This document shows, one piece after another, positions 1 to 57,720 of a stretch of DNA of 64,000 nt. The stretch is from Octopus sinensis (taxonomy: Eukaryota): the NCBI RefSeq assembly GCF_006345805.1, contig NC_043025.1:7378001-7442000 (forward strand), in the 5' to 3' direction. The notes beneath the pieces are model-generated. The model worked only from the letters and a program-made list of their open reading frames with translations, had not been told where the DNA came from and made no database searches. The position numbers and the translations under genes are program-made. Every line of letters starts with the position of its first letter. The stretch's first letter is position 1.

Positions 1-269
1 GAAAACATAAAGGGACAAAACAGGACAAAAGGTTACAAAAGGTTTTGTCCGTTTTTCGAAAGAAAAAAGTCCATGTAAACAAACTTTACAACAAAGAAAA
101 AATTCAACAGTTTACAAAAAACTCCCAATAGAGGAGACGCTTCGAAAAAAAGAAAAGGTCTCACGTGGAAAAACCCATAAATGAGAAGCCCTTAAGCTCA
201 ATAGATTCAAATCTTACATTTATTTTTATTTTTCTGTTATACCGTGGTATGTTGTGCCACAAAAGACTG

Positions 270-845
270 TTCTTATTTCTTTATTGCCCACAAGGGTTAA
301 ACAGAGTTGGAATAAACAAGGACAGACAAAGGGATTAAATTGATTACATCGACCCCCATGCGTACCTGGTACTTAATTTATCGACCTTGAAATGAAGAAG
401 GACAAAGTCGACCACGGCGGAATTTGAACTCAGAACATAACAACAGACGAAATACTTATTTCTTTACTATCCACAAGGGGCTAAACATAGAGAGGACAAA
501 CAAGGACAGATAAACGGATTAAGTCGATTATATCGACCCGAGTACGTAACTGGTACTTAATTTATCGACCTCGAAATGAAGAAAGACAAAGTCGACCTCG
601 GCAGAATTTGATCTCAGCATGTAACGACAGACGAAATACCTATTTCTTTACTACCCACAAGGGGCTAAACATAGAGAGGACAAACAAGCGCAGAGAAAGG
701 GATTAAGTCAATTACATCAACCCCAGTGCGTAACTGGTACTTATTTAATCGACCCCGAAAGGATGAAAAGCAAAGTCGACCACGGCAGAATTTGAACTCA
801 GAACGTAACGGCAGATGAAATACCTATTTCTTTACTACCCACAAA
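270..845 (-). mobile_element. SINE family B head-to-tail multimer (~190-bp units, ~3 copies)
   Basis: Repeated CTTTCATCCTTTCGGGGTCGATAAATTAAGTACCAGT core. Related copies: 7625-7937, 16466-16696 (monomer with head), 20041-20400, 22150-22620, 46612-46980, 47030-47215. Confidence 0.8.
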
Positions 846-875
846 GCCCTTAAGCTCAATATATTCAAATCTTAC

Positions 876-1061
876 CTTTATTTTTCTCTTCTTTTTCTCA
901 ACTATCTTCAGTAGTTTCTTTCGTAGTTTCTTCGAGATTACTACTTTGGTCTCCTTTTTAGCTGCTATCTTTTTCGTTTTCCGTTTTTCCGATGGTAGGA
1001 CGAGGGCATTGCTGTCGTCGTAGGAAGTTTGCTGACTTTGTACAGGAAGATCAAGTTGTAT
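876..1061 (-). CDS. DHX37: DHX37 coding exon 2 (gene continues left of the window)
   Basis: IQLDLPVQSQQTSYDDSNALVLPSEKRKTKKIAAKKETKVVISKKLRKKLLKIVEKKKRKIK matches the DHX37 DASNALVLP...KK-rich segment. Acceptor ctctcattttgtttattcaaag|, donor AAG|GTAAGA; phase 0/0, in frame with exon 1. An in-frame TAG acceptor at 1086-1087 cannot be excluded. Confidence 0.85.
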
Positions 1062-1765
1062 CTTTGAATAAACAAAATGAGAGACCTAGAGTAAATTTCC
1101 ATGCAACACTTTCAAAATAAGCGAAGTAACCAGTTCTAAAACAAGGTATAAATAGTAGCAATGCTGGACAGTAACGTTTTTTTGGCCACTATAACACGGC
1201 TGTTCTATAAAGAACTAGTTGCCCTATAAAGAGCAAGTTGGTTAACACTATTTTTTTTTTGTTTTGGTGTCCGGGTCACCCCCTCAGACGCTTTCGGAAA
1301 TTCCCGGCGTGAATTTTCCGAGGCCTCTCCCCCACTCCCCTTTCGTTTAGAGGAAGTTGTTTTACACCTATTACACAAATTTTTTTTGATTTTTTGACTG
1401 GGTTTAACGCTTTAGTTTAACCTACATTTACTACATTTTAACCCCAGGAAAATGTCCGGATCTTTTCGGTTTGAACAGCAGTTTTTTCTAGCGGTGTCAT
1501 ATGAAATTGTCACCCATAATTATGACCCTAGAACCAATCTAGTAGACAATAGAGAGAGTTGAAGACAGTGAGAGAGAGAAAGAGGGATAGTGAGAGCTAG
1601 TAATGACTAGAGAGAGTGTGAAACCGAGTAATAGAAAGAGAGAATGTAGAAATAGGGATAAAAAAGGGGGAGAGGTACTAAAAAGAAGTAGTGAGAGGGA
1701 GTAATAGAAAGGTAGATGTTGATATAGTTAGAAACAGAGAGAGAGAAAGCAACAGGTAGGGGTAG

Positions 1766-2184
1766 GGATCTTTTCGGTTTGAATGGCAGTTTTTTCTAGC
1801 GGTGTCATATGAAATTGTCACCCATAATTATGACCCTAGTATCGATATATTGCATTTCAATCTGTTTTAGGGTTAGGGGTGGGGGGAAGGGTATCTTTTT
1901 TTCTTCACAAATGTAAATAAACCCAATCTGTTTCTTAAACGAGGGACATATTCATACGGCACAGAATGTTTTTTTTTTACCTCAATAGACGTCATTGATT
2001 GGTTGAAATTGCAGAAATTGAAGAAAAAAAAAACAACAAATATGTTACAAACTATAGAATTTTCTCAATAAAGCCAAGAGAAAAAGATGTTTTATAAACA
2101 CATTCTTCCAGTATACGAAGTTTAAAAGTGTTTAGTTACGTGGAAATTATTTTTAAAAAATTGCCGTTCAAACCGAAAAGATCC
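1766..2184. mobile_element. MITE-like element with ~23-bp TIRs
   Basis: GGATCTTTTCGGTTTGAAYGGCA...TGCCGTTCAAACCGAAAAGATCC; second copy 5962-6361, partial copy 1458-1531; no coding capacity. Confidence 0.75.
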
Positions 2185-2207
2185 AAATATAGAAATCATT
2201 TCATATT

Positions 2208-2268
<61 letters not shown>

Positions 2269-2389
2269 ATTTCTATTAATATAATTAGCTAGTAAATGGT
2301 GATTTTTTTAATGAGTTGAATTAAAAGAAAATGTTGGACATAATATTTACTAACTGTGGAAAAAAAACTTTATTAATTTAGCACATATA

Positions 2390-2792
2390 GCGCAGGAGTG
2401 GCTGTGTGGTAAGTAGGTTGCTTACCAACCACCTGGTTCCAGGTTCAGTCCTACTGTGTGGCACCTTGGGAAAGTGTCTTCTGCTATAGCCTCGGGCCGA
2501 CCAAAGCCTTGTGAGTGGATTTGGTAGACGGAAACTGAAAGAAGCCTGTTGTATATATGTATATATATATATGTGTGTGTGTATATATGTTTGTGTGTCT
2601 GTGTTTGTCCCCCTAGCATTGCTTGACAACTGATGCTGGCGTGTTTACGTCCCCGTCACTTAGCGGTTCGGCAAAATAGACCGATAGAATAAGTACTAGG
2701 CTTACAACGAATAAGTCCCGGGGTCGATTTGCTCGACCAGAGGCGGTGCTCCAGCATGGCAGTAGTCAAAATGACTGAAACAAGTAAAAGAG
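2390..2792 (+). mobile_element. Dominant tRNA-derived SINE family A, representative (~30 full or partial copies in the window)
   Basis: Head with A-box-like TGGCTGTGTGG and B-box-like GGTTCAGTCC, internal (TA)/(TG) tract, 3' end GACTGAAACAAGTAAAAGAG. Other copies (approx.): + 4349-5070, 19490-19867, 28430-28866, 35245-35625, 48372-48780, 50135-50510, 50618-51020; - 5388-5792, 14855-15287, 20765-21266, 24883-25278, 27095-27527, 35735-35930, 39612-40031, 40830-41250, 51137-51523. Confidence 0.85.
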
Positions 2793-3913
2793 AGAGAGAG
2801 AGATCTCAGGAGTCAAGATTATTAAAAAGTAATGGAAGGGAGGTAATCGAACGAACCCAGTAATTTCTCTAGATATATACAATTTTTTTTGTAAATAATT
2901 CATATTAATATAGAATCATAATTAGCTAGTAAATGGCGATTCTTGTTTATTTACACATTCTTACACACGTGTAATGAACTGTTACCAAAATATCTTCATC
3001 TTATCAAATCCATGGATGCTGTCCAAAAACTAAAAACTAGTAAAAGAATAGATCACACACATTCTATGTGATTTGTGTAAAAACATCATATACATTGTTC
3101 TAAGAAATAATTTATTTACTTTCTTTAAAAAATTCTTTTATTTTATTCTGTAAAATCAACTCATTTGCATACGCGCAAGTCGTAGTAGGATCGACTAGTT
3201 ACGACTAGCTAGCGCGGACGCGCGACTGCGCGTACCGGGTCCAGTCTTCGCTAGTAGTACCAGTTATATGATGTATAAAAACATGTAATATACAAATAAA
3301 TATCTGTAAATATAAAACCATCCGAATTTCTGAGTACCTTATTTCTTCTAATATAAAATGCCTGTACATCACCTCCAAACCTTCCAATATATACATAAAT
3401 ATATAGATATATACGATGGGCTTCTTTCAGTTTCCGTCTACCAAATCCATTCACAAGGCTTTGGTCGGCCTGAGGCTATAGCAGAAGACACTTGCCCAAG
3501 GTGCCACGAAGTGGGACTGAACCCGGAACCATGTAGTTGGTAAGCAAGCTACTTACCACACAGTCACTCCTGCGCCTATATATACATATATATGACAGGC
3601 TTCTTTCAGTTTCCGTCTAAAAAATCCACTCACAAAGCTTTAGTAGAAGACACTTGCCCAAGGTGCCACGCAGTGGGACTGAACCCGGAACCATGTGGTT
3701 GGTAAACAAGCTACTTACCACACAGCCACTATTTTTGGGAATTTTTAAAACGTTTTTGCGAATTTATATTCTACACACGGGTATATTTGCACCACGTGGT
3801 AAAATTTGTTTTTACTTTGATCATAAGGTATGCAACACCAAATACTGAGTGGAGTCCAAACGACAACCACCAACAAATAGAAAGGTTTCTTTACAAAAAC
3901 TCAAAACTCCTAC

Positions 3914-3994
3914 CTTTTCCTGTTCTGTTTTATTAATGGCAATCTCCAGCTGTTGTCGACCTTTCTGATTATATCTTCTCCTCAATCGACCCAT
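3914..3994 (-). CDS. DHX37: ATP-dependent RNA helicase DHX37, coding exon 1
   Basis: Manual translation MGRLRRRYNQKGRQQLEIAINKTEQEK matches the DHX37 N-terminus as recalled (human MGKLRRRYNIKGRQQ). 81 nt, ends AAG|GTAGGA (phase 0). Confidence 0.9.
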
Positions 3995-4084
3995 GACTTT
4001 AACGCCTAAATTACGAACAGAATCTCCCTTTTTTTGCTAAAACAGAATCCCAAAACGTTTCACTCAAAATTACAGAACCTTAAA

Positions 4085-4090
4085 CACGTG
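4085..4090. promoter_or_regulatory. Candidate E-box CACGTG ~90 bp upstream of the DHX37 ATG (second CACGTG at 3793-3798 in intron 1)
   Basis: Two canonical CACGTG boxes flank exon 1; motif match only. Confidence 0.3.
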
Positions 4091-4478
4091 CGTATATTAT
4101 CAAGCAGAGCGGTCAATGATGAACATCAGTTCCTTGTGTAAAACATTTCCGGTTACAAACTAACAACACTCCGGGTTTATTTTCTTTACCTTTTTCCAAT
4201 TCTTAGAATTTTAATGTCTCTATTCTCTCTCTCTCTCTCTTTGCTCTTTTACTTGTTTCAGTCATTTGACTGCGGCCATGCTGGAGCACCGCCTTTTTAG
4301 TCGTTTGACATAATATTTACTAAAAACTTTATTAATTTGGCACATATAGCGCAGGAGTGTGGTAAGTAGCTTGCTAACCAGCCACATGGTTCCGGGTTCA
4401 GTCCCACTGCGTGGCAACTTGGGCAAGTGTCTTCTGCTATAGCCCCGGGCCGACCAAAGCCTTGTGAGTGGATTTGGT

Positions 4479-4806
4479 TTAAGAAGACTCCGCCGGTTAC
4501 GACGACGAGGGTCCCAGCTGATCCGATCAACGGAACAGCTTGCTCGTGAAATTAACGTGCAAATGGCTGAGCATTCCACAGACACGTGTACCCTTAACGT
4601 AGTTCTCGGGGATAATCAGCGTGACACAGAGAGTGACAAGGCTGACCCTTTGAAATACAAGTACAACTCATTTTTGCCAGCTGAGTGGACTGGAGCAACG
4701 TGAAATAAAGTGTCTTGCTCAAGGACACAACGCGTCGCCGGGAATCGAACTCACAACCTTACGATCATGAGCCGAATGCCCTAACCACTAAGCCACGCGC
4801 CCTCAC
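4479..4806 (-). mobile_element. Young tRNA-derived SINE nested in a family A SINE, with 12-bp TSD
   Basis: Head GTGAGGGCGCGTGGCTTAGTGGTTAGG...GAGTTCGATTCCC (A/B boxes); AGTGGATTTGGT duplicated at 4467-4478 and 4807-4818. Confidence 0.88.
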
Positions 4807-5208
4807 AGTGGATTTGGTAGACGGAAACTGAAAGAAGCCTGTCGTATATATGTATGTATACAGATATATCCGTGTGTGTCTGTGTTTGTCCCCCTAGCAT
4901 TGCTTGACAACCGATGCTGGTGTGTTTATGTCCCCGAAACTTAGCGGTTCGGCAAAACGGACCGATAGAATAAGTACTGGGCTTACAAAGAATAAGTCCC
5001 GGGTTCGATTTGCTCGATTAAAGGCGGTGCTCCAGCATGGCCGCAGTCAAATGACTGAAACAAGTAAATGGGTAAAAGGAGTCAATAAGATATATTAAAA
5101 AGTAATGGAAGAGAGGTAATCAAGATGATATAGTTACTAAATTTATAAAGTTTTTCTCCACAGGTAGTAAATATTATGTCTAAACATATTCTTTTAATTC
5201 GACTAATT

Positions 5209-6632
5209 AATAAAACAAATCACCATTTACTAGCTAATTGTGATTCTATATTAATAGAAATAGAGATATATTAATATGAAATATTTGCAAAAAATTCTAA
5301 ATATCTAGAGAAATTACTTGGTTCGTCTCGATTACCTCCCTTACACTACTTTTTAATATATCTTGACTCCTGAGATCTCTCTCTCTCTCTTTTACTTGTT
5401 TAAGTCATTTGACTGCGGCCATGCTGGAGCACCGCCTTTAGTCGAGCAAATCGACCCCAGGACTTATTCTTTGTAAGCCCAGTACTTATTCTATCGGTCT
5501 GTTTTGCCGAACCGCTAAGTGACGGGGACGTAAACACACCAGCATCGGTTGTCAAGCAATGCTAGGGGGACAAACACAGACACACAAACATATACACACA
5601 TACATATATATATATATACATACATATATACGACAGGCTTCTTTCAGTTTCCGTCTACCAAATCCACTCACAAGGCTTTGGTCGGCCCGAGGCTATAGCA
5701 GAAGACACTTTCCCAAGGTGCCACACAGTAGGACTGAACCTGGAACCAGGTGGTTGGTAAGCAAGCTACTTACCACACAGCCACTCCTGCGCTATATGTG
5801 CTAAATTAATAAAGTTTTTTTTCCACAGTTAGTAAATATTATGTCCAACATTTTCTTTTAATTCAACTCATTAAAAAAATCACCATTTTCTAGCTAATTA
5901 TATTAATAGAAATGGATATATATATATATATTTATATAAATATGAAATGATTTCTATATTTGGATCTTTTCGGTTTGACCGGCAGTTTTTTTAAATAATT
6001 TCTACGTAACAAAACACTTTTAAACTTCGTATACTGGTAGAATGTGTTTATAAAACATCTTTTTCTCTTGGCTTTATTGAGAAAATTCTATAGTTTGTAA
6101 CATATTTGTGGGTTTTTTTCTTCAATTTCTGCAATTTCAACCAATCAATGACGTCCATTGAGGTAAAAAAAAAACATTCTGTGCCGTATGAATATGTCCC
6201 TCGTTTAAGAAACAGATTGGGTTTATTTACATTTCTGAAGAAAAAAGATACCCTTCCACCCACCCCTAACCCTAAAACAGATCGATACTAGGGTCATAAT
6301 TATGGGTGACAATTTCATATGATACCGCTAGAAAAAACTGCCGTTCAAACCGAAAAGATCCCTACCCCTACCTGTTGCTTTCTCTCTCTCTGTTTCTAAC
6401 TATATCAACGTCTACCTTTCTATTACTCCCTCTCACTACTTACTATTAGTACCTCTCCCTCTTTTTTTATCCCTATTTCTTCATTCTCTCTTTCTATTAC
6501 TCCGTTTCACACTCTCTCTTTCTCTCGCTATATCCAACACTCTCTCTAGTCATTACTAGCTCTCACTATCCCTCTTTCTCTCTCTCACTGTCTTCAACTC
6601 TCTCCATTTCTTCCTCTCTCTATCGTCTACTA
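5209..6632. repeat. Right arm of ~1.4-kb inverted duplication
   Basis: Reverse complement of 1540-2951; ends ~150 bp before the VPS53 ATG. Confidence 0.9.
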
Positions 6633-6782
6633 TCTCCAACTCTCACATCTTCTCTCTCATCTCTCTCTTTTCATTAGTATCTATCTCTTTCACTCCCCTT
6701 CCTCCACCTCTCTCGCTCAAACACATCATCTCGATCCCCCTCACTTTACTCTTCTCCTCCCACTCTCGGCTCTGATGGCAAC

Positions 6783-45688
<38,906 letters not shown>

Positions 45689-54800: not shown

Positions 54801-54829
<29 letters not shown>

Positions 54830-54839
<10 letters not shown>

Positions 54840-57281
54840 CATTAGGAAGGGCATCCAGCTGTAGAAACGTTGCCAAATCAGATTGGAGTCTGGTGCAGCC
54901 TTCGGGCTTCCCAAACCTCAGTTGAACCGTCCAACCCCTGCTAGCATGGAAAGCGGACATTAAATGATGATGATGATGATATATATATATAGGGTATGAT
55001 GGGTAAATTGCCATATTATATTTTTAATTTTGTGCATTGTTTGTTTTTGATTTTGTAGACTACATAGTATAGTAGGGTCAGTTGGGCACCATCTGTGAGA
55101 AAAACAGCACCATGACGCATTTCACTCTGCCAGAAATTTGGAAACGACATGCTGTACTGCTTGGCATTCATGCCAGAAACTCCAATGCAAACACTTCAGA
55201 GTGTTTGGGTGTCAATCTGAGGAAATGTATCAAGAGTGGTAAAAATCAAACATCCAGTCAACATCATGGTGTTTGGAATGATCACTAGTGATGGCGACGT
55301 TATTCCTCCATTCATCTTCCCACACGGCCTCAGACTCAACATGGAGGCCTACATTAAGTGCCTGGAGGAGGTAGCGCGGCCCTTGGTCAAGAGTGGCTGC
55401 TGGAAGATCCTATGTCTGGTAGCAGGACTCTGCACCATTCCACACAAGCAGGAGAACCCACTCATGACTGTCAGACAATTTCTGTGACCACATCACCCCT
55501 AACACCTGATCACCTAACTTCCCAAACTGCAACCCCCTTGATTATTATGTGTAGGGCGCAGTTGAGCGAGGGACCGACAAAACTCCTTGTAACACCAAAG
55601 ATGAACTGCAGGCAAGAATGATGGCTGCATTCACCAACTTAAACAAGGAGACCACCCAGAAGAGTTGCAGGAGATTCTGAAGTCGTTTGGAGGCTGAGCT
55701 TGAAGCCAATGGTGATTTTATTGAATAAATTTACTCTTTAGTATTTCAAGACATTTTTATGTAATTTTGGTAAATATATCTGTTAAAATGAGATGTCAGC
55801 GTTATTTTCATTTTTGTGTAATTTAGATGACAGTTTATTCACTTATGTAAATCTCTCTCTCTATATATATATATCGAAAATCAAAAATCAAAATCGAAAT
55901 CGTTCAACATCAATGGAAATTGTAGCTGTGATACCAGTGCCGGTGGCACATAAGAGAACCATCCGAACGTGGCTGTTGCCAGCGCTGCCCCGACTGGCCT
56001 CCGTGCCGGTGGCACGTAAAAAGCACCATCCGATCGTGACCGTTTGCTAGCCTCGTCTGGCACCTGTGCAGATGGCACGTAAAAAGCACCCACTACACTC
56101 TCAGAGTGGTTGGCGTTAGGAAGGGCACCCAGCCGTAGAAACACTGCCAGATCAGACTGGGTCTGGCGCAGCCTACTGGCTTCCCAGACCCCAGTTGAAC
56201 CTTCCAACCCATGCTAGCATGGAAAACGGACGTTAAACGATGATGATGATGATTATATATATATATATACATTAGGAAGGGCATCCAGCTGTAGAAACGT
56301 TGCCAAATCAGATTGGAGTCTGGTGCAGCCTTCGGGCTTCCCAAACCTCAGTTGAACCGTCCAACCCCTGCTAGCATGGAAAGCGGACATTAAATGATGA
56401 TGATGATGATATATATATATAGGGTATGATGGGTAAATTGCCATATTATATTTTTAATTTTGTGCATTGTTTGTTTTTGATTTTGTAGACTACATAGTAT
56501 AGTAGGGTCAGTTGGGCACCATCTGTGAGAAAAACAGCACCATGACGCATTTCACTCTGCCAGAAATTTGGAAACGACATGCTGTACTGCTTGGCATTCA
56601 TGCCAGAAACTCCAATGCAAACACTTCAGAGTGTTTGGGTGTCAATCTGAGGAAATGTATCAAGAGTGGTAAAAATCAAACATCCAGTCAACATCATGGT
56701 GTTTGGAATGATCACTAGTGATGGCGACGTTATTCCTCCATTCATCTTCCCACACGGCCTCAGACTCAACACGGAGGCCTACATTAAGTGCCTGGAGGAG
56801 GTAGCGCGGCCCTTGGTCAAGAGTGGCTGCTGGAAGATCCTATGTCTGGTAGCAGGACTCTGCACCATTCCACACAAGCAGGAGAACCCACTCATGACTG
56901 TCAGACAATTTCTGCGACCACATCACCCCTAACACCTGATCACCTAACTTCCCAAACTGCAACCCCCTTGATTATTATGTGTAGGGCGCAGTTGAGCGAG
57001 GGACCGACAAAACTCCTTGTAACACCAAAGATGAACTGCAGGCAAGAATGATGGCTGCATTCACCAACTTAAACAAGGAGACCACCCAGAAGAGTTGCAG
57101 GAAATTCTGAAGTCGTTTGGAGGCTGAGCTTGAAGCCAATGGTGATTTTATTGAATAAATTTACTCTTTAGTATTTCAAGACATTTTTATGTAATTTTGG
57201 TAAATATATCTGTTAAAATGAGATGTCAGTGTTATTTTCATTTTTGTGTAATTTAGATGACAGTTTATTCACTTATGTAAA

Positions 57282-57314
<33 letters not shown>

Positions 57315-57691
57315 CGAAAATCAAAAATCAAAATCAAAATCGTTCAACATCAATGGAAATTGTAGCTGTGATACCAGTGCCGGTGGCACATAAGAGAACC
57401 ATCCGAACGTGGCCGTTGCCAGCGCTGCCCCGACTGGCCTCCGTGCCGGTGGCACGTAAAAAGCACCATCCGATCGTGACCGTTTGCTAGCCTCGTCTGG
57501 CACCTGTGCAGATGGCACGTAAAAAGCACCCACTACACTCTCAGAGTGGTTGGCGTTAGGAAGGGCACCCAGCCGTAGAAACACTGCCAGATCAGACTGG
57601 GTCTGGCGCAGCCTACTGGCTTCCCAGACCCCAGTTGAACCTTCCAACCCATGCTAGCATGGAAAACGGACGTTAAACGATGATGATGATG

Positions 57692-57720
<29 letters not shown>
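54830..57720. repeat. Near-identical 1430-bp tandem duplication (family C pieces plus deleted DD37D transposon, 54990-55850 and 56420-57280)
   Basis: ATTAGGAAGGGCATCC at 54841 and 56271; copies differ by a handful of substitutions and (TA)n length. Confidence 0.92.

What the first reader, a model, noticed from the sequence alone, without database searches (positions are those of the whole stretch)
1540..6632. 1.4-kb inverted duplication straddles DHX37 exon 1 and copies the VPS53 upstream region into DHX37 intron 1
Seen: arms 1540-2951 and 5209-6632 are reverse complements, carry the same MITE and a SINE with the same private mutations, and enclose DHX37 exon 1. The right arm ends 150 bp before the VPS53 ATG and includes its CT-rich upstream tract; the left copy points in the DHX37 sense direction ~480 bp before exon 2. 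Inference: possible duplicated promoter giving an exon-1-less DHX37 transcript; a substrate for flip-flop inversion of the start exon; or, if DHX37 initiates further upstream, a long dsRNA stem looping out exon 1.
Basis: partly seen in the sequence, partly recalled or inferred. Interest (0 to 1): 0.72.

Follow-up and report, generated by a model that had tools for sequence, protein, structure and literature searches.

The report
Inverted duplication around octopus DHX37 exon 1
A real 1.4-kb stretch of mostly transposon-derived DNA from upstream of the octopus VPS53 gene was copied backwards into the first intron of the neighbouring DHX37 gene before two octopus species split. The copies have since swapped sequence, but nothing yet shows the structure does anything.

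Summary
Window 1540-2951 and 6632-5209 form one collinear inverted alignment: 96.4% identity in ungapped columns, with 17 indels. The window is Octopus sinensis chromosome CM016887.1. The arms enclose DHX37 exon 1 (3994-3914, minus strand). The right arm ends 150 bp before the VPS53 ATG (6783), and the left arm lies 479 bp from DHX37 exon 2.

- **Not an artefact.** O. vulgaris, from a separate assembly project, has both arms and the same outer junction.
- **Age.** Argonauta has the same head-to-head gene pair but no repeat. The O. bimaculoides assembly is too gapped to date the event further.
- **Direction of copying.** The right arm is the parent. Its CT-rich tract is orthologous to the tract upstream of VPS53 in O. 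bimaculoides.
- **Outer junction.** The left copy joins an 84-bp MITE end through 2 nt of microhomology.
- **Exchange between arms.** Four-way site patterns, shared indels and a 256-bp near-identical stretch indicate gene conversion after speciation.

My best reading is an ordinary, probably neutral, inverted low-copy repeat made by templated repair or template switching. In both species DHX37 exon 1 lies in the same, functional orientation. Interest is low to moderate.

The parts
1540..2951 (.). Left arm, the derived copy, inside DHX37 intron 1. In + orientation it holds a GA-rich tract (1542-1765), a MITE (1766-2184), an (AT)n run, unit U (2267-2389), a SINE (2390-2792), the SINE flank and a partial second U (to 2951).
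   Evidence: Collinear inverted alignment to 6632-5209. Both arms are present in O. vulgaris, L003 4895-6341.
5209..6632 (.). Right arm, the parental copy, upstream of VPS53. It holds the flank and partial U2, the SINE (5387-5792), U (5793-5915), (AT)n, the MITE (5962-6361) and a CT-rich tract (6362-6632) that continues unduplicated to the VPS53 ATG.
   Evidence: The CT tract is orthologous to O. bimaculoides L001 9586-10000, directly upstream of its VPS53 ATG.
2952..5208 (.). The 2257-bp spacer between the arms. It holds DHX37 exon 1, about 240 bp of repeat-free sequence upstream of its ATG (3995-4234), and several SINE fragments.
   Evidence: Sequence. Same orientation in O. vulgaris: window 3578-4213 matches L003 6901-7549 plus/plus.
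3914..3994 (-). DHX37 exon 1 coding part (MGRLRRRYNQKGRQQ...), with the GT donor at 3913-3912.
   Evidence: tblastn. The annotated 1189-aa gene with DEAD, Helicase_C, HA2_C, OB_NTP_bind and DHX37_C domains ends at this position. The Argonauta orthologue is 74% identical.
876..1061 (-). DHX37 exon 2, 479 bp from the outer end of the left arm.
   Evidence: tblastn. Splice sites read from the sequence.
6783..6884 (+). VPS53 exon 1 coding part. The 150 bp before it are not duplicated.
1458..1541 (+). An 84-bp fragment of the MITE 5' end lying at the outer end of the left arm. It starts exactly at the MITE terminus (GGATC...) and joins the duplicated segment through 2 nt of microhomology (TA).
   Evidence: Positions 1458-1531 are 97.3% identical to 1766-1839. 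The junction is identical in O. vulgaris, where the fragment reads ...GTATCGATCTA|GTAGACGATAG.
2294..2549 (.). Near-identical stretch between the O. sinensis arms (partner 5888-5633): 256 bp with one difference. I read it as a recent gene-conversion tract. It contains the five shared 'private' SINE mutations.
   Evidence: Only 0.085% of random placements of the 65 differences give so long a stretch.
4303..5121 (+). An older third local copy of [end of U + SINE + 3' flank], 84-85% identical to the left arm (BLAST pieces 2333-2525 and 2514-2848; the SINE part is up to 92% complementary to the right arm without gaps). It is interrupted by a nested tRNA-derived SINE (4490-4806) and is inverted relative to the adjacent right arm.
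   Evidence: (I2, D8, D13). Sub-threshold tRNA match at 4731-4800. Also present in O. vulgaris.

Best explanation
This is a lineage-specific inverted low-copy repeat (a small inverted segmental duplication), not a mobile element and not an artefact.

**Origin.** In an ancestor of O. sinensis and O. vulgaris, 1.4 kb from the TE-filled intergenic region between the head-to-head genes DHX37 and VPS53 was copied in reverse into DHX37 intron 1. The copied piece held part of the CT-rich tract upstream of VPS53, a MITE, a low-copy unit and a SINE. I infer that the copying was replicative or repair-templated: template switching, or double-strand-break repair with a templated insertion. The outer junction joins position 84 of a MITE fragment to the copied segment through only 2 nt of microhomology. 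The inner junction lies inside non-mobile sequence.

**Since then.** The arms have exchanged sequence by non-crossover gene conversion, so they evolve partly in concert. A crossover between the arms would invert the 2.26-kb spacer and cut the DHX37 promoter and start exon off from the rest of the gene. I infer that such products are removed by selection.

**Function.** I consider the structure selectively neutral or slightly hazardous, with no demonstrated regulatory role.

**Shown versus inferred.**
- Shown: the structure, its presence in two species, the direction of copying, the shared junction, and the mosaic site patterns.
- Inferred: the molecular mechanism of origin, gene conversion as the cause of the mosaic, and neutrality.
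For: 1. **One collinear inverted alignment.** It crosses several unrelated elements and their junctions at 96.4% ungapped identity. The non-SINE parts have no other copy in the window, in L001 or in L003, apart from the MITE fragment and older local pieces.
2. **Both arms in O. vulgaris.** L003 4895-6341 and 8415-9850 align with 52 mismatches in 1386 ungapped columns. The same MITE-fragment junction is present.
3. **Predates speciation.** Arm-specific substitutions are shared across species at 1625, 1647, 1987 and 2167. A 28-bp segment is absent from both left arms, present in full in the O. sinensis right arm and in part in the O. vulgaris right arm.
4. **Absent from the outgroup.** Argonauta hians has the same head-to-head genes, with 1903 bp between the ATGs and a 1.46-kb intron 1. 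It has no inverted match at E<=1e-20 in the 12 kb examined.
5. **Direction of copying.** The CT tract upstream of VPS53 in O. bimaculoides is orthologous to the right arm. The left tract is cut short and abuts a MITE fragment.
6. **Exchange between arms.**
   - Site patterns are 11 species-specific, 5 arm-specific and 4 cross. Arm-specific sites lie in the outer part and species-specific sites in the inner part (Fisher p = 0.0014 on a split chosen after seeing the data).
   - An 11-bp indel and a 174-bp element are each shared by both arms of one species only.
   - The O. sinensis arms differ at 3 of 304 sites in 2257-2560, against 3-6% elsewhere (randomisation).
   - All five shared private SINE mutations are absent from both O. 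vulgaris arms.
7. **No coding or known RNA content in the arms.** There are only spurious SINE-derived ORFs, no Rfam family and no tRNA.
8. **A documented parallel.** A human F8 rearrangement placed an inverted duplicated segment in intron 1 through a 2-base microhomology junction. It was attributed to template switching (PMC7507428).
Against: - Neutrality is an absence-of-evidence argument. No transcript, TSS, small-RNA or population data could be obtained with the tools used here.
- The duplicated part of the CT tract is fairly well conserved against O. bimaculoides: 183/208 in ungapped columns, including a block of about 48 bp with one difference. It may therefore carry VPS53 regulatory sequence, which the left arm would duplicate.
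- The 84-bp fragment starts exactly at a MITE terminus. That suggests a transposase-made junction, which a pure template-switch model does not explain. The MITE may have been there first, or aberrant transposition may have been involved.
- Some species-specific shared variants could reflect short-read polishing across two near-identical arms rather than biology.
- The shared 174-bp indel lies between (AT)n runs, where parallel deletion is conceivable.
- Genome-wide copy number of the arm could not be checked.
Confidence: 0.72

Rival explanations
1. Duplicated promoter. The left arm carries a working copy of VPS53 upstream regulatory sequence. It drives a DHX37-sense transcript that starts in intron 1 and lacks exon 1.
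For: - The left arm holds 224 bp homologous to the CT-rich tract 150-420 bp upstream of the VPS53 ATG, oriented toward DHX37 exon 2, 479 bp away.
- That tract is moderately conserved against O. bimaculoides: 183/208 ungapped, with a near-invariant block of about 48 bp that is intact in all four arms.
Against: - The copy lacks the 150 bp next to the ATG, whose last ~92 bp are 85/94 identical to O. bimaculoides. The position of the VPS53 TSS is unknown.
- Exon 2 contains no Met codon (translation). An exon-1-less mRNA would lose the N-terminus that is conserved from octopus to human.
- The left tract has lost 28 bp (in both species) and 16 bp (in O. sinensis) relative to the right. It shows no more constraint than its surroundings.
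- The annotated gene models start at exon 1.
Confidence: 0.1
2. Hairpin RNA. A long DHX37-sense transcript runs through both arms and folds into a ~1.3-kb double-stranded stem that loops out exon 1. One possible source is upstream-antisense transcription from the VPS53 promoter. The stem would be a substrate for ADAR editing or Dicer.
For: - If co-transcribed, the arms are predicted to form 1313 inter-arm base pairs, with a co-fold energy of -2239 kcal/mol against -362 and -299 for the arms alone.
- Editing clusters in dsRNA are widespread in animals (title and abstract of PMC5625713; PMC9989829 listed).
Against: - The right arm lies 1.2-2.6 kb upstream of the DHX37 ATG, beyond a compact repeat-free stretch of ~240 bp that probably holds the DHX37 promoter.
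- No evidence exists for a start beyond 6632 on the minus strand.
- The arms decay and lose pieces at about the background rate. The inner 150 bp of the left arm is replaced by a microsatellite in O. vulgaris.
Confidence: 0.07
3. Invertible segment. Recombination between the arms flips the spacer that carries the DHX37 promoter and start exon, either as a regulated switch or as a standing inversion polymorphism.
For: - The arms clearly interact, as the conversion signatures show.
- They keep perfect runs of 132 and 123 bp.
- Two 'cross' sites (2677, 2698) share a derived haplotype between the O. sinensis left arm and the O. vulgaris right arm. A reciprocal exchange would explain this.
- The same geometry in human F8 (int1h-1 in intron 1, int1h-2 outside the gene) yields recurrent inversions (PMC7507428).
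Against: - Both assemblies show the spacer in the same, functional orientation.
- Inversion would uncouple exon 1 from exon 2 of a helicase gene with a conserved role in ribosome biogenesis (from general knowledge). It would be a loss-of-function allele, as it is in F8.
- No recombinase gene or recombination site is present.
- Two cross sites are weak evidence. Homoplasy or polishing errors could also produce them.
Confidence: 0.05
4. Composite mobile element or coincidence. The two arms are independent insertions of one larger transposable unit, or of the same MITE and SINE by chance.
For: Most of each arm consists of repeats: a MITE with 30-bp terminal inverted repeats and a SINE with 13 other near-full-length copies in the window.
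Against: - The homology includes the junctions between elements and low-copy sequence, and the CT tract native to the VPS53 upstream region.
- No other copy of 1542-2389 occurs in about 64 kb of O. sinensis, 46 kb of O. vulgaris or 27 kb of assembled O. bimaculoides sequence.
- There is no target-site duplication at 1530-1539 versus 6633-6642.
- The arm ends are not element termini.
Confidence: 0.04
5. Assembly artefact, for example a fold-back chimeric read.
For: Inverted duplicates can arise from chimeric long reads.
Against: - The arms differ at 48 sites and 17 indels.
- The same structure is found in the separate O. vulgaris assembly, with species-specific differences and arm-specific shared substitutions.
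- The two assemblies come from different projects (PMC10700109).
Confidence: 0.02

Closest known systems
Human F8 int1h-1 / int1h-2 repeats, and the template-switch insertion into F8 intron 1 described in PMC7507428
   Same: One repeat copy lies in intron 1 and the other outside the gene. Recombination between them inverts the segment between the repeats and splits the gene. In the reported patient, an inverted duplicated segment entered intron 1 through a 2-base microhomology junction. That matches the 2-nt junction here.
   Different: The F8 repeats are described as almost identical and lie about 126 kb telomeric to the gene. Here the arms differ by 3.6%, are 2.26 kb apart and consist mostly of transposon sequence. 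No inversion allele has been seen. This is an analogy of geometry and mechanism, not homology.
Sex-chromosome palindromes with arm-to-arm gene conversion (human Y P1-P8, primate X palindromes)
   Same: These are inverted duplicates with a unique spacer. Their arms exchange sequence by gene conversion, are shared between related species, and undergo occasional inversions (abstracts and titles of PMC3723533 and PMC8327919).
   Different: Those arms are described as large and more than 99% identical, and they carry testis-expressed gene families. X palindromes are reported to be preserved by selection. Here the arms are 1.4 kb and 96% identical, conversion is patchy, they hold no genes, and there is no sign of selection.
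Inverted SINE/Alu pairs in transcripts that form ADAR-edited dsRNA
   Same: Each arm holds an inverted SINE. The arms would form a long duplex if they were in one RNA.
   Different: Co-transcription is not shown. The right arm lies upstream of the likely DHX37 promoter. The homology extends far beyond the SINE.
Foldback / long-TIR transposons and bacterial invertible promoter switches
   Same: Inverted arms flank an internal segment that contains a promoter.
   Different: There are no target-site duplications, no element termini at the arm ends, no recombinase and no second orientation. The internal segment is a host gene's start exon.

Membership tests
Inverted low-copy repeat / inverted segmental duplication | Collinear homology across several unrelated sequence elements, including their junctions | tested here: met
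   A single alignment 1540-2951 vs 6632-5209 runs through the GA/CT tract, MITE, (AT)n, unit U, SINE and flank.
Inverted low-copy repeat / inverted segmental duplication | Low copy number: the unit as a whole is not a dispersed repeat | tested here: inconclusive
   No further copy of the non-SINE parts was found in the window, L001 or L003. The whole genome could not be searched with these tools.
Inverted low-copy repeat / inverted segmental duplication | A real genomic structure, reproducible in independent data | tested here: met
   Both arms and the same outer junction are present in O. vulgaris GCA_951406725.2.
Palindrome with arm-to-arm gene conversion | Arms of one species share derived states that the orthologous arms of a sister species lack, although the duplication predates the split | tested here: met
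   There are 11 species-specific against 5 arm-specific sites. An 11-bp and a 174-bp indel are each shared within one species. Five private SINE mutations sit in both O. sinensis arms only. A 256-bp stretch has one difference. Caveat: polishing artefacts cannot be excluded.
Palindrome with arm-to-arm gene conversion | Very high arm identity (more than 99%) maintained along the whole arm | tested here: not met
   Overall ungapped identity is 96.4% in O. sinensis and 96.2% in O. vulgaris. Only a sub-tract of ~300 bp reaches 99%.
Foldback or long-TIR transposable element | Target-site duplication flanking the outer arm ends, and multiple genomic copies | tested here: not met
   The flanks AGAACCAATC (1530-1539) and TCTCCAACTC (6633-6642) are unrelated. 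No other copies were found in the sequence available. The interior holds a host exon.
Invertible DNA switch | Both orientations of the internal segment occur | tested here: not met
   [quoted passage not shown] This is only two haplotypes, and no read-level data were available.
Invertible DNA switch | A dedicated recombinase or recombination sites | tested here: not met
   ORFs of 60 aa or more in 1400-6800 are SINE- or MITE-derived and spurious.
Duplicated (alternative) promoter | The copy contains the parental core promoter/TSS and initiates transcription | not testable with these tools
   No TSS or transcript data. The copy covers -150 to -420 relative to the VPS53 ATG and lacks the proximal 150 bp.
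ADAR/Dicer substrate hairpin | Both arms lie in one transcript | not testable with these tools
   Only the pairing potential could be computed. Look-ups of ORFs in the arm found no transcript contigs.

The most novel reading that the evidence does not exclude
The repeat is kept because it acts on expression. Antisense transcription from the VPS53 promoter region would run through the right arm, DHX37 exon 1 and the left arm. The resulting ~1.3-kb hairpin would be edited or diced and would couple the output of the two head-to-head genes. Alternatively, occasional reciprocal exchange between the arms (hinted at by the two 'cross' sites at 2677/2698) flips the DHX37 start exon in some cells or lineages.
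Probability: 0.06. Interest if true: 0.65.

Novelty: new member of a known kind. Interest (0 to 1): 0.27.

Why it matters
As it stands, this is a well-documented small example of a known process. An inverted low-copy repeat, built from transposon-rich DNA, formed beside an essential gene's start exon. It survived speciation and evolves partly in concert.

Its value is mainly as a natural marker.
- The shared junction and mosaic site patterns give a dated case of intrachromosomal gene conversion in a cephalopod genome. The event is older than the O. sinensis / O. vulgaris split, put at about 2.5 million years in PMC10700109.
- The geometry is the same one that causes recurrent gene-breaking inversions in human F8.

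It would matter more if transcript or long-read data showed a second DHX37 start site, an edited hairpin or an inversion polymorphism. Those checks are cheap, because Iso-Seq and FLAM-seq data for the O. vulgaris annotation (PMC10700109) and long-read data for both species already exist.

Tried and rejected
- **Known RNAs.** An Rfam scan of 1-8000 at a permissive threshold found nothing in the arms. The only hits were sub-threshold microsatellite-driven miRNA matches at 7047-7630 and a sub-threshold tRNA-like match in the nested SINE. ARAGORN found no tRNA.
- **Coding content.** ORFs of 60 aa or more in 1400-6800 are all SINE- or MITE-derived. There is no transposase or recombinase.
- **Transcript or read contigs.** Exact look-ups of two ORFs from the right-arm MITE found nothing. 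O. sinensis VPS53 isoform X2 is not on record as a gene product.
- **O. bimaculoides as outgroup for the left arm.** The locus has six N gaps between DHX37 and VPS53. DHX37 exons 1 and 2 were not found in the assembled parts, so presence or absence of the left arm cannot be decided. A MITE-family copy at L001 6182-6378 has a different 3' flank and is probably not orthologous.
- **'The copy misses the conserved promoter part.'** I first thought this and then tempered it. The duplicated distal tract is about as conserved (183/208) as the proximal 92 bp (85/94).
- **Aberrant-transposition models for the origin.** I considered hybrid-element insertion and sister-chromatid transposition. Simple forms predict that the MITE terminus is followed directly by the MITE body and its 3' flank. 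The observed order is [MITE 1-84][GA tract][full MITE], so I rejected them as the sole mechanism. A role for a pre-existing intronic MITE is not excluded.
- **The bacterial promoter/terminator scan** was not used, because it does not apply to an animal genome.

Full report
**Source and genes**

The first 8 kb of the window are 100% identical to Octopus sinensis GCA_006345805.1, chromosome CM016887.1. Window position 1 equals L002 position 3219.

- They locate the DHX37 start exon at 3994-3914 and exon 2 at 1061-876 on the minus strand.
- They locate 19 or more VPS53 exons from 6783 to 45685 on the plus strand.
- An assembled VPS53 protein is 98% identical to the annotated O. sinensis VPS53.
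- The annotated minus-strand neighbour that ends at window 3994 is a 1189-aa protein with DEAD, Helicase_C, HA2_C, OB_NTP_bind and DHX37_C domains.

The two genes are head to head, with 2789 bp between their ATGs. The same arrangement holds in O. vulgaris (2666 bp), in O. bimaculoides and in Argonauta hians (1903 bp).

BLAST of 1400-3000 against the window returns one inverted alignment, 1548-2948 vs 6608-5213. A global alignment gives 1301 matches, 48 mismatches and 17 gap openings, which is 96.4% identity in ungapped columns. The lower figures from ungapped extension come from indels, not from divergence.

In left-arm orientation each arm contains:
- a GA-rich tract, the reverse of the CT-rich tract upstream of VPS53;
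- a 419/400-bp MITE with 30-bp terminal inverted repeats;
- an (AT)n run;
- a low-copy unit U;
- a SINE with 13 other near-full-length copies in the window;
- about 150 bp of flank.

Only the SINE is a dispersed repeat here. The homology crosses every junction, so this is a duplication of a composite segment, not a coincidence of insertions. No target-site duplication flanks the structure. The arms hold no credible ORF, Rfam family or tRNA.

**Not an artefact, and older than a speciation**

O. vulgaris (GCA_951406725.2), from a separate assembly project (PMC10700109), has both arms at L003 4895-6341 and 8415-9850. They differ at 52 of 1386 ungapped columns.

The outer junction of the left arm is the same in both species. 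Four substitutions (1625, 1647, 1987, 2167) separate left arms from right arms in both species. A 28-bp segment is absent from both left arms, present in full in the O. sinensis right arm and in part in the O. vulgaris right arm. The duplication therefore predates the split, which PMC10700109 puts at about 2.5 million years.

Argonauta hians has the same gene pair, a 1.46-kb intron 1 and no inverted repeat in the 12 kb examined.

O. bimaculoides is undecidable for the left arm, because its locus is riddled with N gaps. Upstream of its VPS53, the CT tract runs on for about 100 bp where O. sinensis has the MITE. This suggests the MITE, and therefore the duplication that contains it, arose after that lineage split off. 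PMC10700109 puts that split at about 34 million years.

**Direction of copying and origin**

The right arm is the parent.
- Its CT tract continues unbroken to the VPS53 ATG.
- It is orthologous to the O. bimaculoides tract.
- The left tract stops at 1542.

There it abuts an 84-bp fragment (1458-1541) that begins exactly at the MITE 5' terminus. The first 74 bp of that fragment are 97% identical to the MITE inside the arm. In O. vulgaris, where the fragment is less mutated, the junction reads ...GTATCGATCTA|GTAGACGATAG. It shares only TA with both source sequences. The inner junction (2951/2952) lies inside the second U unit and is not an element end.

I infer a templated copying event: template switching during replication, or break repair with a templated insertion. 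It either landed in a pre-existing intronic MITE or carried a short extra templated piece. A human case with the same layout has been described: an inverted duplicated segment inserted into F8 intron 1 through a 2-base microhomology junction, attributed to FoSTeS/MMBIR (PMC7507428). Simple aberrant-transposition models do not give the observed order [MITE 1-84][GA tract][full MITE].

The site has a longer history of local rearrangement. A third, older copy of [end of U + SINE + flank] lies at 4303-5121. It is 84-85% identical to the left arm and inverted against the right arm.

**The arms exchange sequence**

Given a duplication older than the species split, orthologous arms should be each other's closest relatives everywhere. 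They are not.
- Among four-way informative sites, 5 are arm-specific, 11 are species-specific and 4 are 'cross'.
- Arm-specific sites lie in the outer GA tract and MITE. Species-specific sites lie mostly in U and the SINE (Fisher p = 0.0014 for a partition chosen after seeing the data).
- Both O. sinensis arms keep an 11-bp string that both O. vulgaris arms lack.
- Both O. vulgaris arms hold a 174-bp dispersed element in the (AT)n run that both O. sinensis arms lack.
- The O. sinensis arms differ at 3 of 304 sites across 2257-2560, against 3-6% in the other segments.
- A 256-bp stretch with one difference is reached in 0.085% of random placements of the 65 differences.

Both O. vulgaris arms have the family-majority base at all five. 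Each O. vulgaris arm also carries its own 9-13 private differences in that segment, so they were not simply polished to a consensus. The simplest account is mutation in the O. sinensis lineage followed by arm-to-arm gene conversion.

Caveats:
- Short-read polishing across near-identical arms could create some shared or swapped variants.
- The 174-bp indel sits between microsatellites, where parallel loss is possible.

Two cross sites (2677, 2698) would need reciprocal exchange, homoplasy or error. I leave them unexplained (note).

**The functional proposals**

1. **Second promoter.** The geometry is as described. The duplicated tract is moderately conserved against O. bimaculoides (183/208 ungapped), as is the non-duplicated proximal 92 bp (85/94). 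I cannot say on which side of 6632 the VPS53 start site lies. The left tract has lost 28 and 16 bp and shows no special constraint. Exon 2 has no Met codon. Verdict: untested.
2. **Flip-flop.** The arms evidently pair and recombine. In both assemblies, however, the spacer is in the orientation that keeps DHX37 intact. Inversion would detach the promoter and start exon, as the analogous F8 intron-1 inversion does. I expect rare, deleterious inversion alleles rather than a switch.
3. **Hairpin RNA.** The pairing potential is very large: 1313 inter-arm pairs. The right arm, though, lies beyond the compact repeat-free 240 bp upstream of the DHX37 ATG. No transcript evidence could be obtained with the tools used here.

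**Verdict**

This is a real, evolutionarily shared inverted low-copy repeat with patchy concerted evolution. It most likely arose by templated repair or template switching and is most likely neutral. It is a new instance of a known kind of structure.

Its closest analogues are the F8 int1h repeats, for geometry and hazard, and sex-chromosome palindromes, for arm-to-arm conversion (PMC3723533, PMC8327919). It differs from both in size, identity and content.

Interest is low to moderate. It would rise if existing transcript or long-read data revealed a second start site, an edited hairpin or an inversion polymorphism.

Noticed in passing
window 54824-57709: A tandem direct duplication of about 1.43 kb (54824-56269 vs 56254-57709), 98.8% identical, lies downstream of VPS53. 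It is younger than the inverted duplication studied here. A 558-bp repeat at 15292-15842 matches both units in inverted orientation at 87%.
   Followed up: no
window 8866-10160; 12477-13974; 32610-35000; 41633-42755: Large tandem arrays sit inside VPS53 introns. One is a G+C-rich 89-bp-period minisatellite at about 8900-10160, with copies up to 99% alike.
   Followed up: no
window 294-845 and 7181-7966: Three tandem 184-bp units lie in DHX37 intron 2. Related copies lie in VPS53 intron 1. This appears to be another repeat family present on both sides of the gene pair (families D5-D7).
   Followed up: no
L003 5603-5776 and 8953-9126; window 3266-3386, 14064-14240: A 174-bp dispersed element ('Y') sits inside the (AT)n run of both O. 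vulgaris arms (98.3% alike) but in neither O. sinensis arm. Related copies occur in the O. sinensis spacer and in a VPS53 intron.
   Followed up: partly
window 2677 and 2698 (partners in 5209-6632; L003 arms): At two sites 21 bp apart, a derived haplotype is shared by the O. sinensis left arm and the O. vulgaris right arm. The other two arms keep the family-majority state. This could be reciprocal exchange, homoplasy or a polishing error.
   Followed up: partly
window 4235-5121 vs 5290-5850: An older, tighter inverted pair lies next to the right arm: a third SINE copy with shared flanks, inverted against the right-arm SINE, with about 170-320 bp between them. It shows repeated fold-back-type rearrangement at this site and is also present in O. 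vulgaris.
   Followed up: partly
L003 10001-46492; L001 10001-25450: There are annotation problems in relatives. O. vulgaris VPS53 is split into two gene models (434 aa and 363 aa). The O. bimaculoides model is truncated (664 aa), and its DHX37 model is also partial (699 aa) in a locus full of N gaps.
   Followed up: no
window 6393-6440 (and 1693-1740 in the left arm): A block of about 48 bp in the CT-rich tract (CTTTCTAACTATATCAACGTCTACCTTTCTATTACTCCCTCTCACTAC) differs at one position between O. sinensis and O. bimaculoides and is intact in all four arms. It may be a regulatory element, but the conservation is not statistically compelling on its own.
   Followed up: partly
L001 6182-6378: O. 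bimaculoides has a diverged copy (74%) of the same MITE family in the region expected to be DHX37 intron 1, in left-arm orientation but with a different 3' flank. An assembly gap hides its 5' part.
   Followed up: partly
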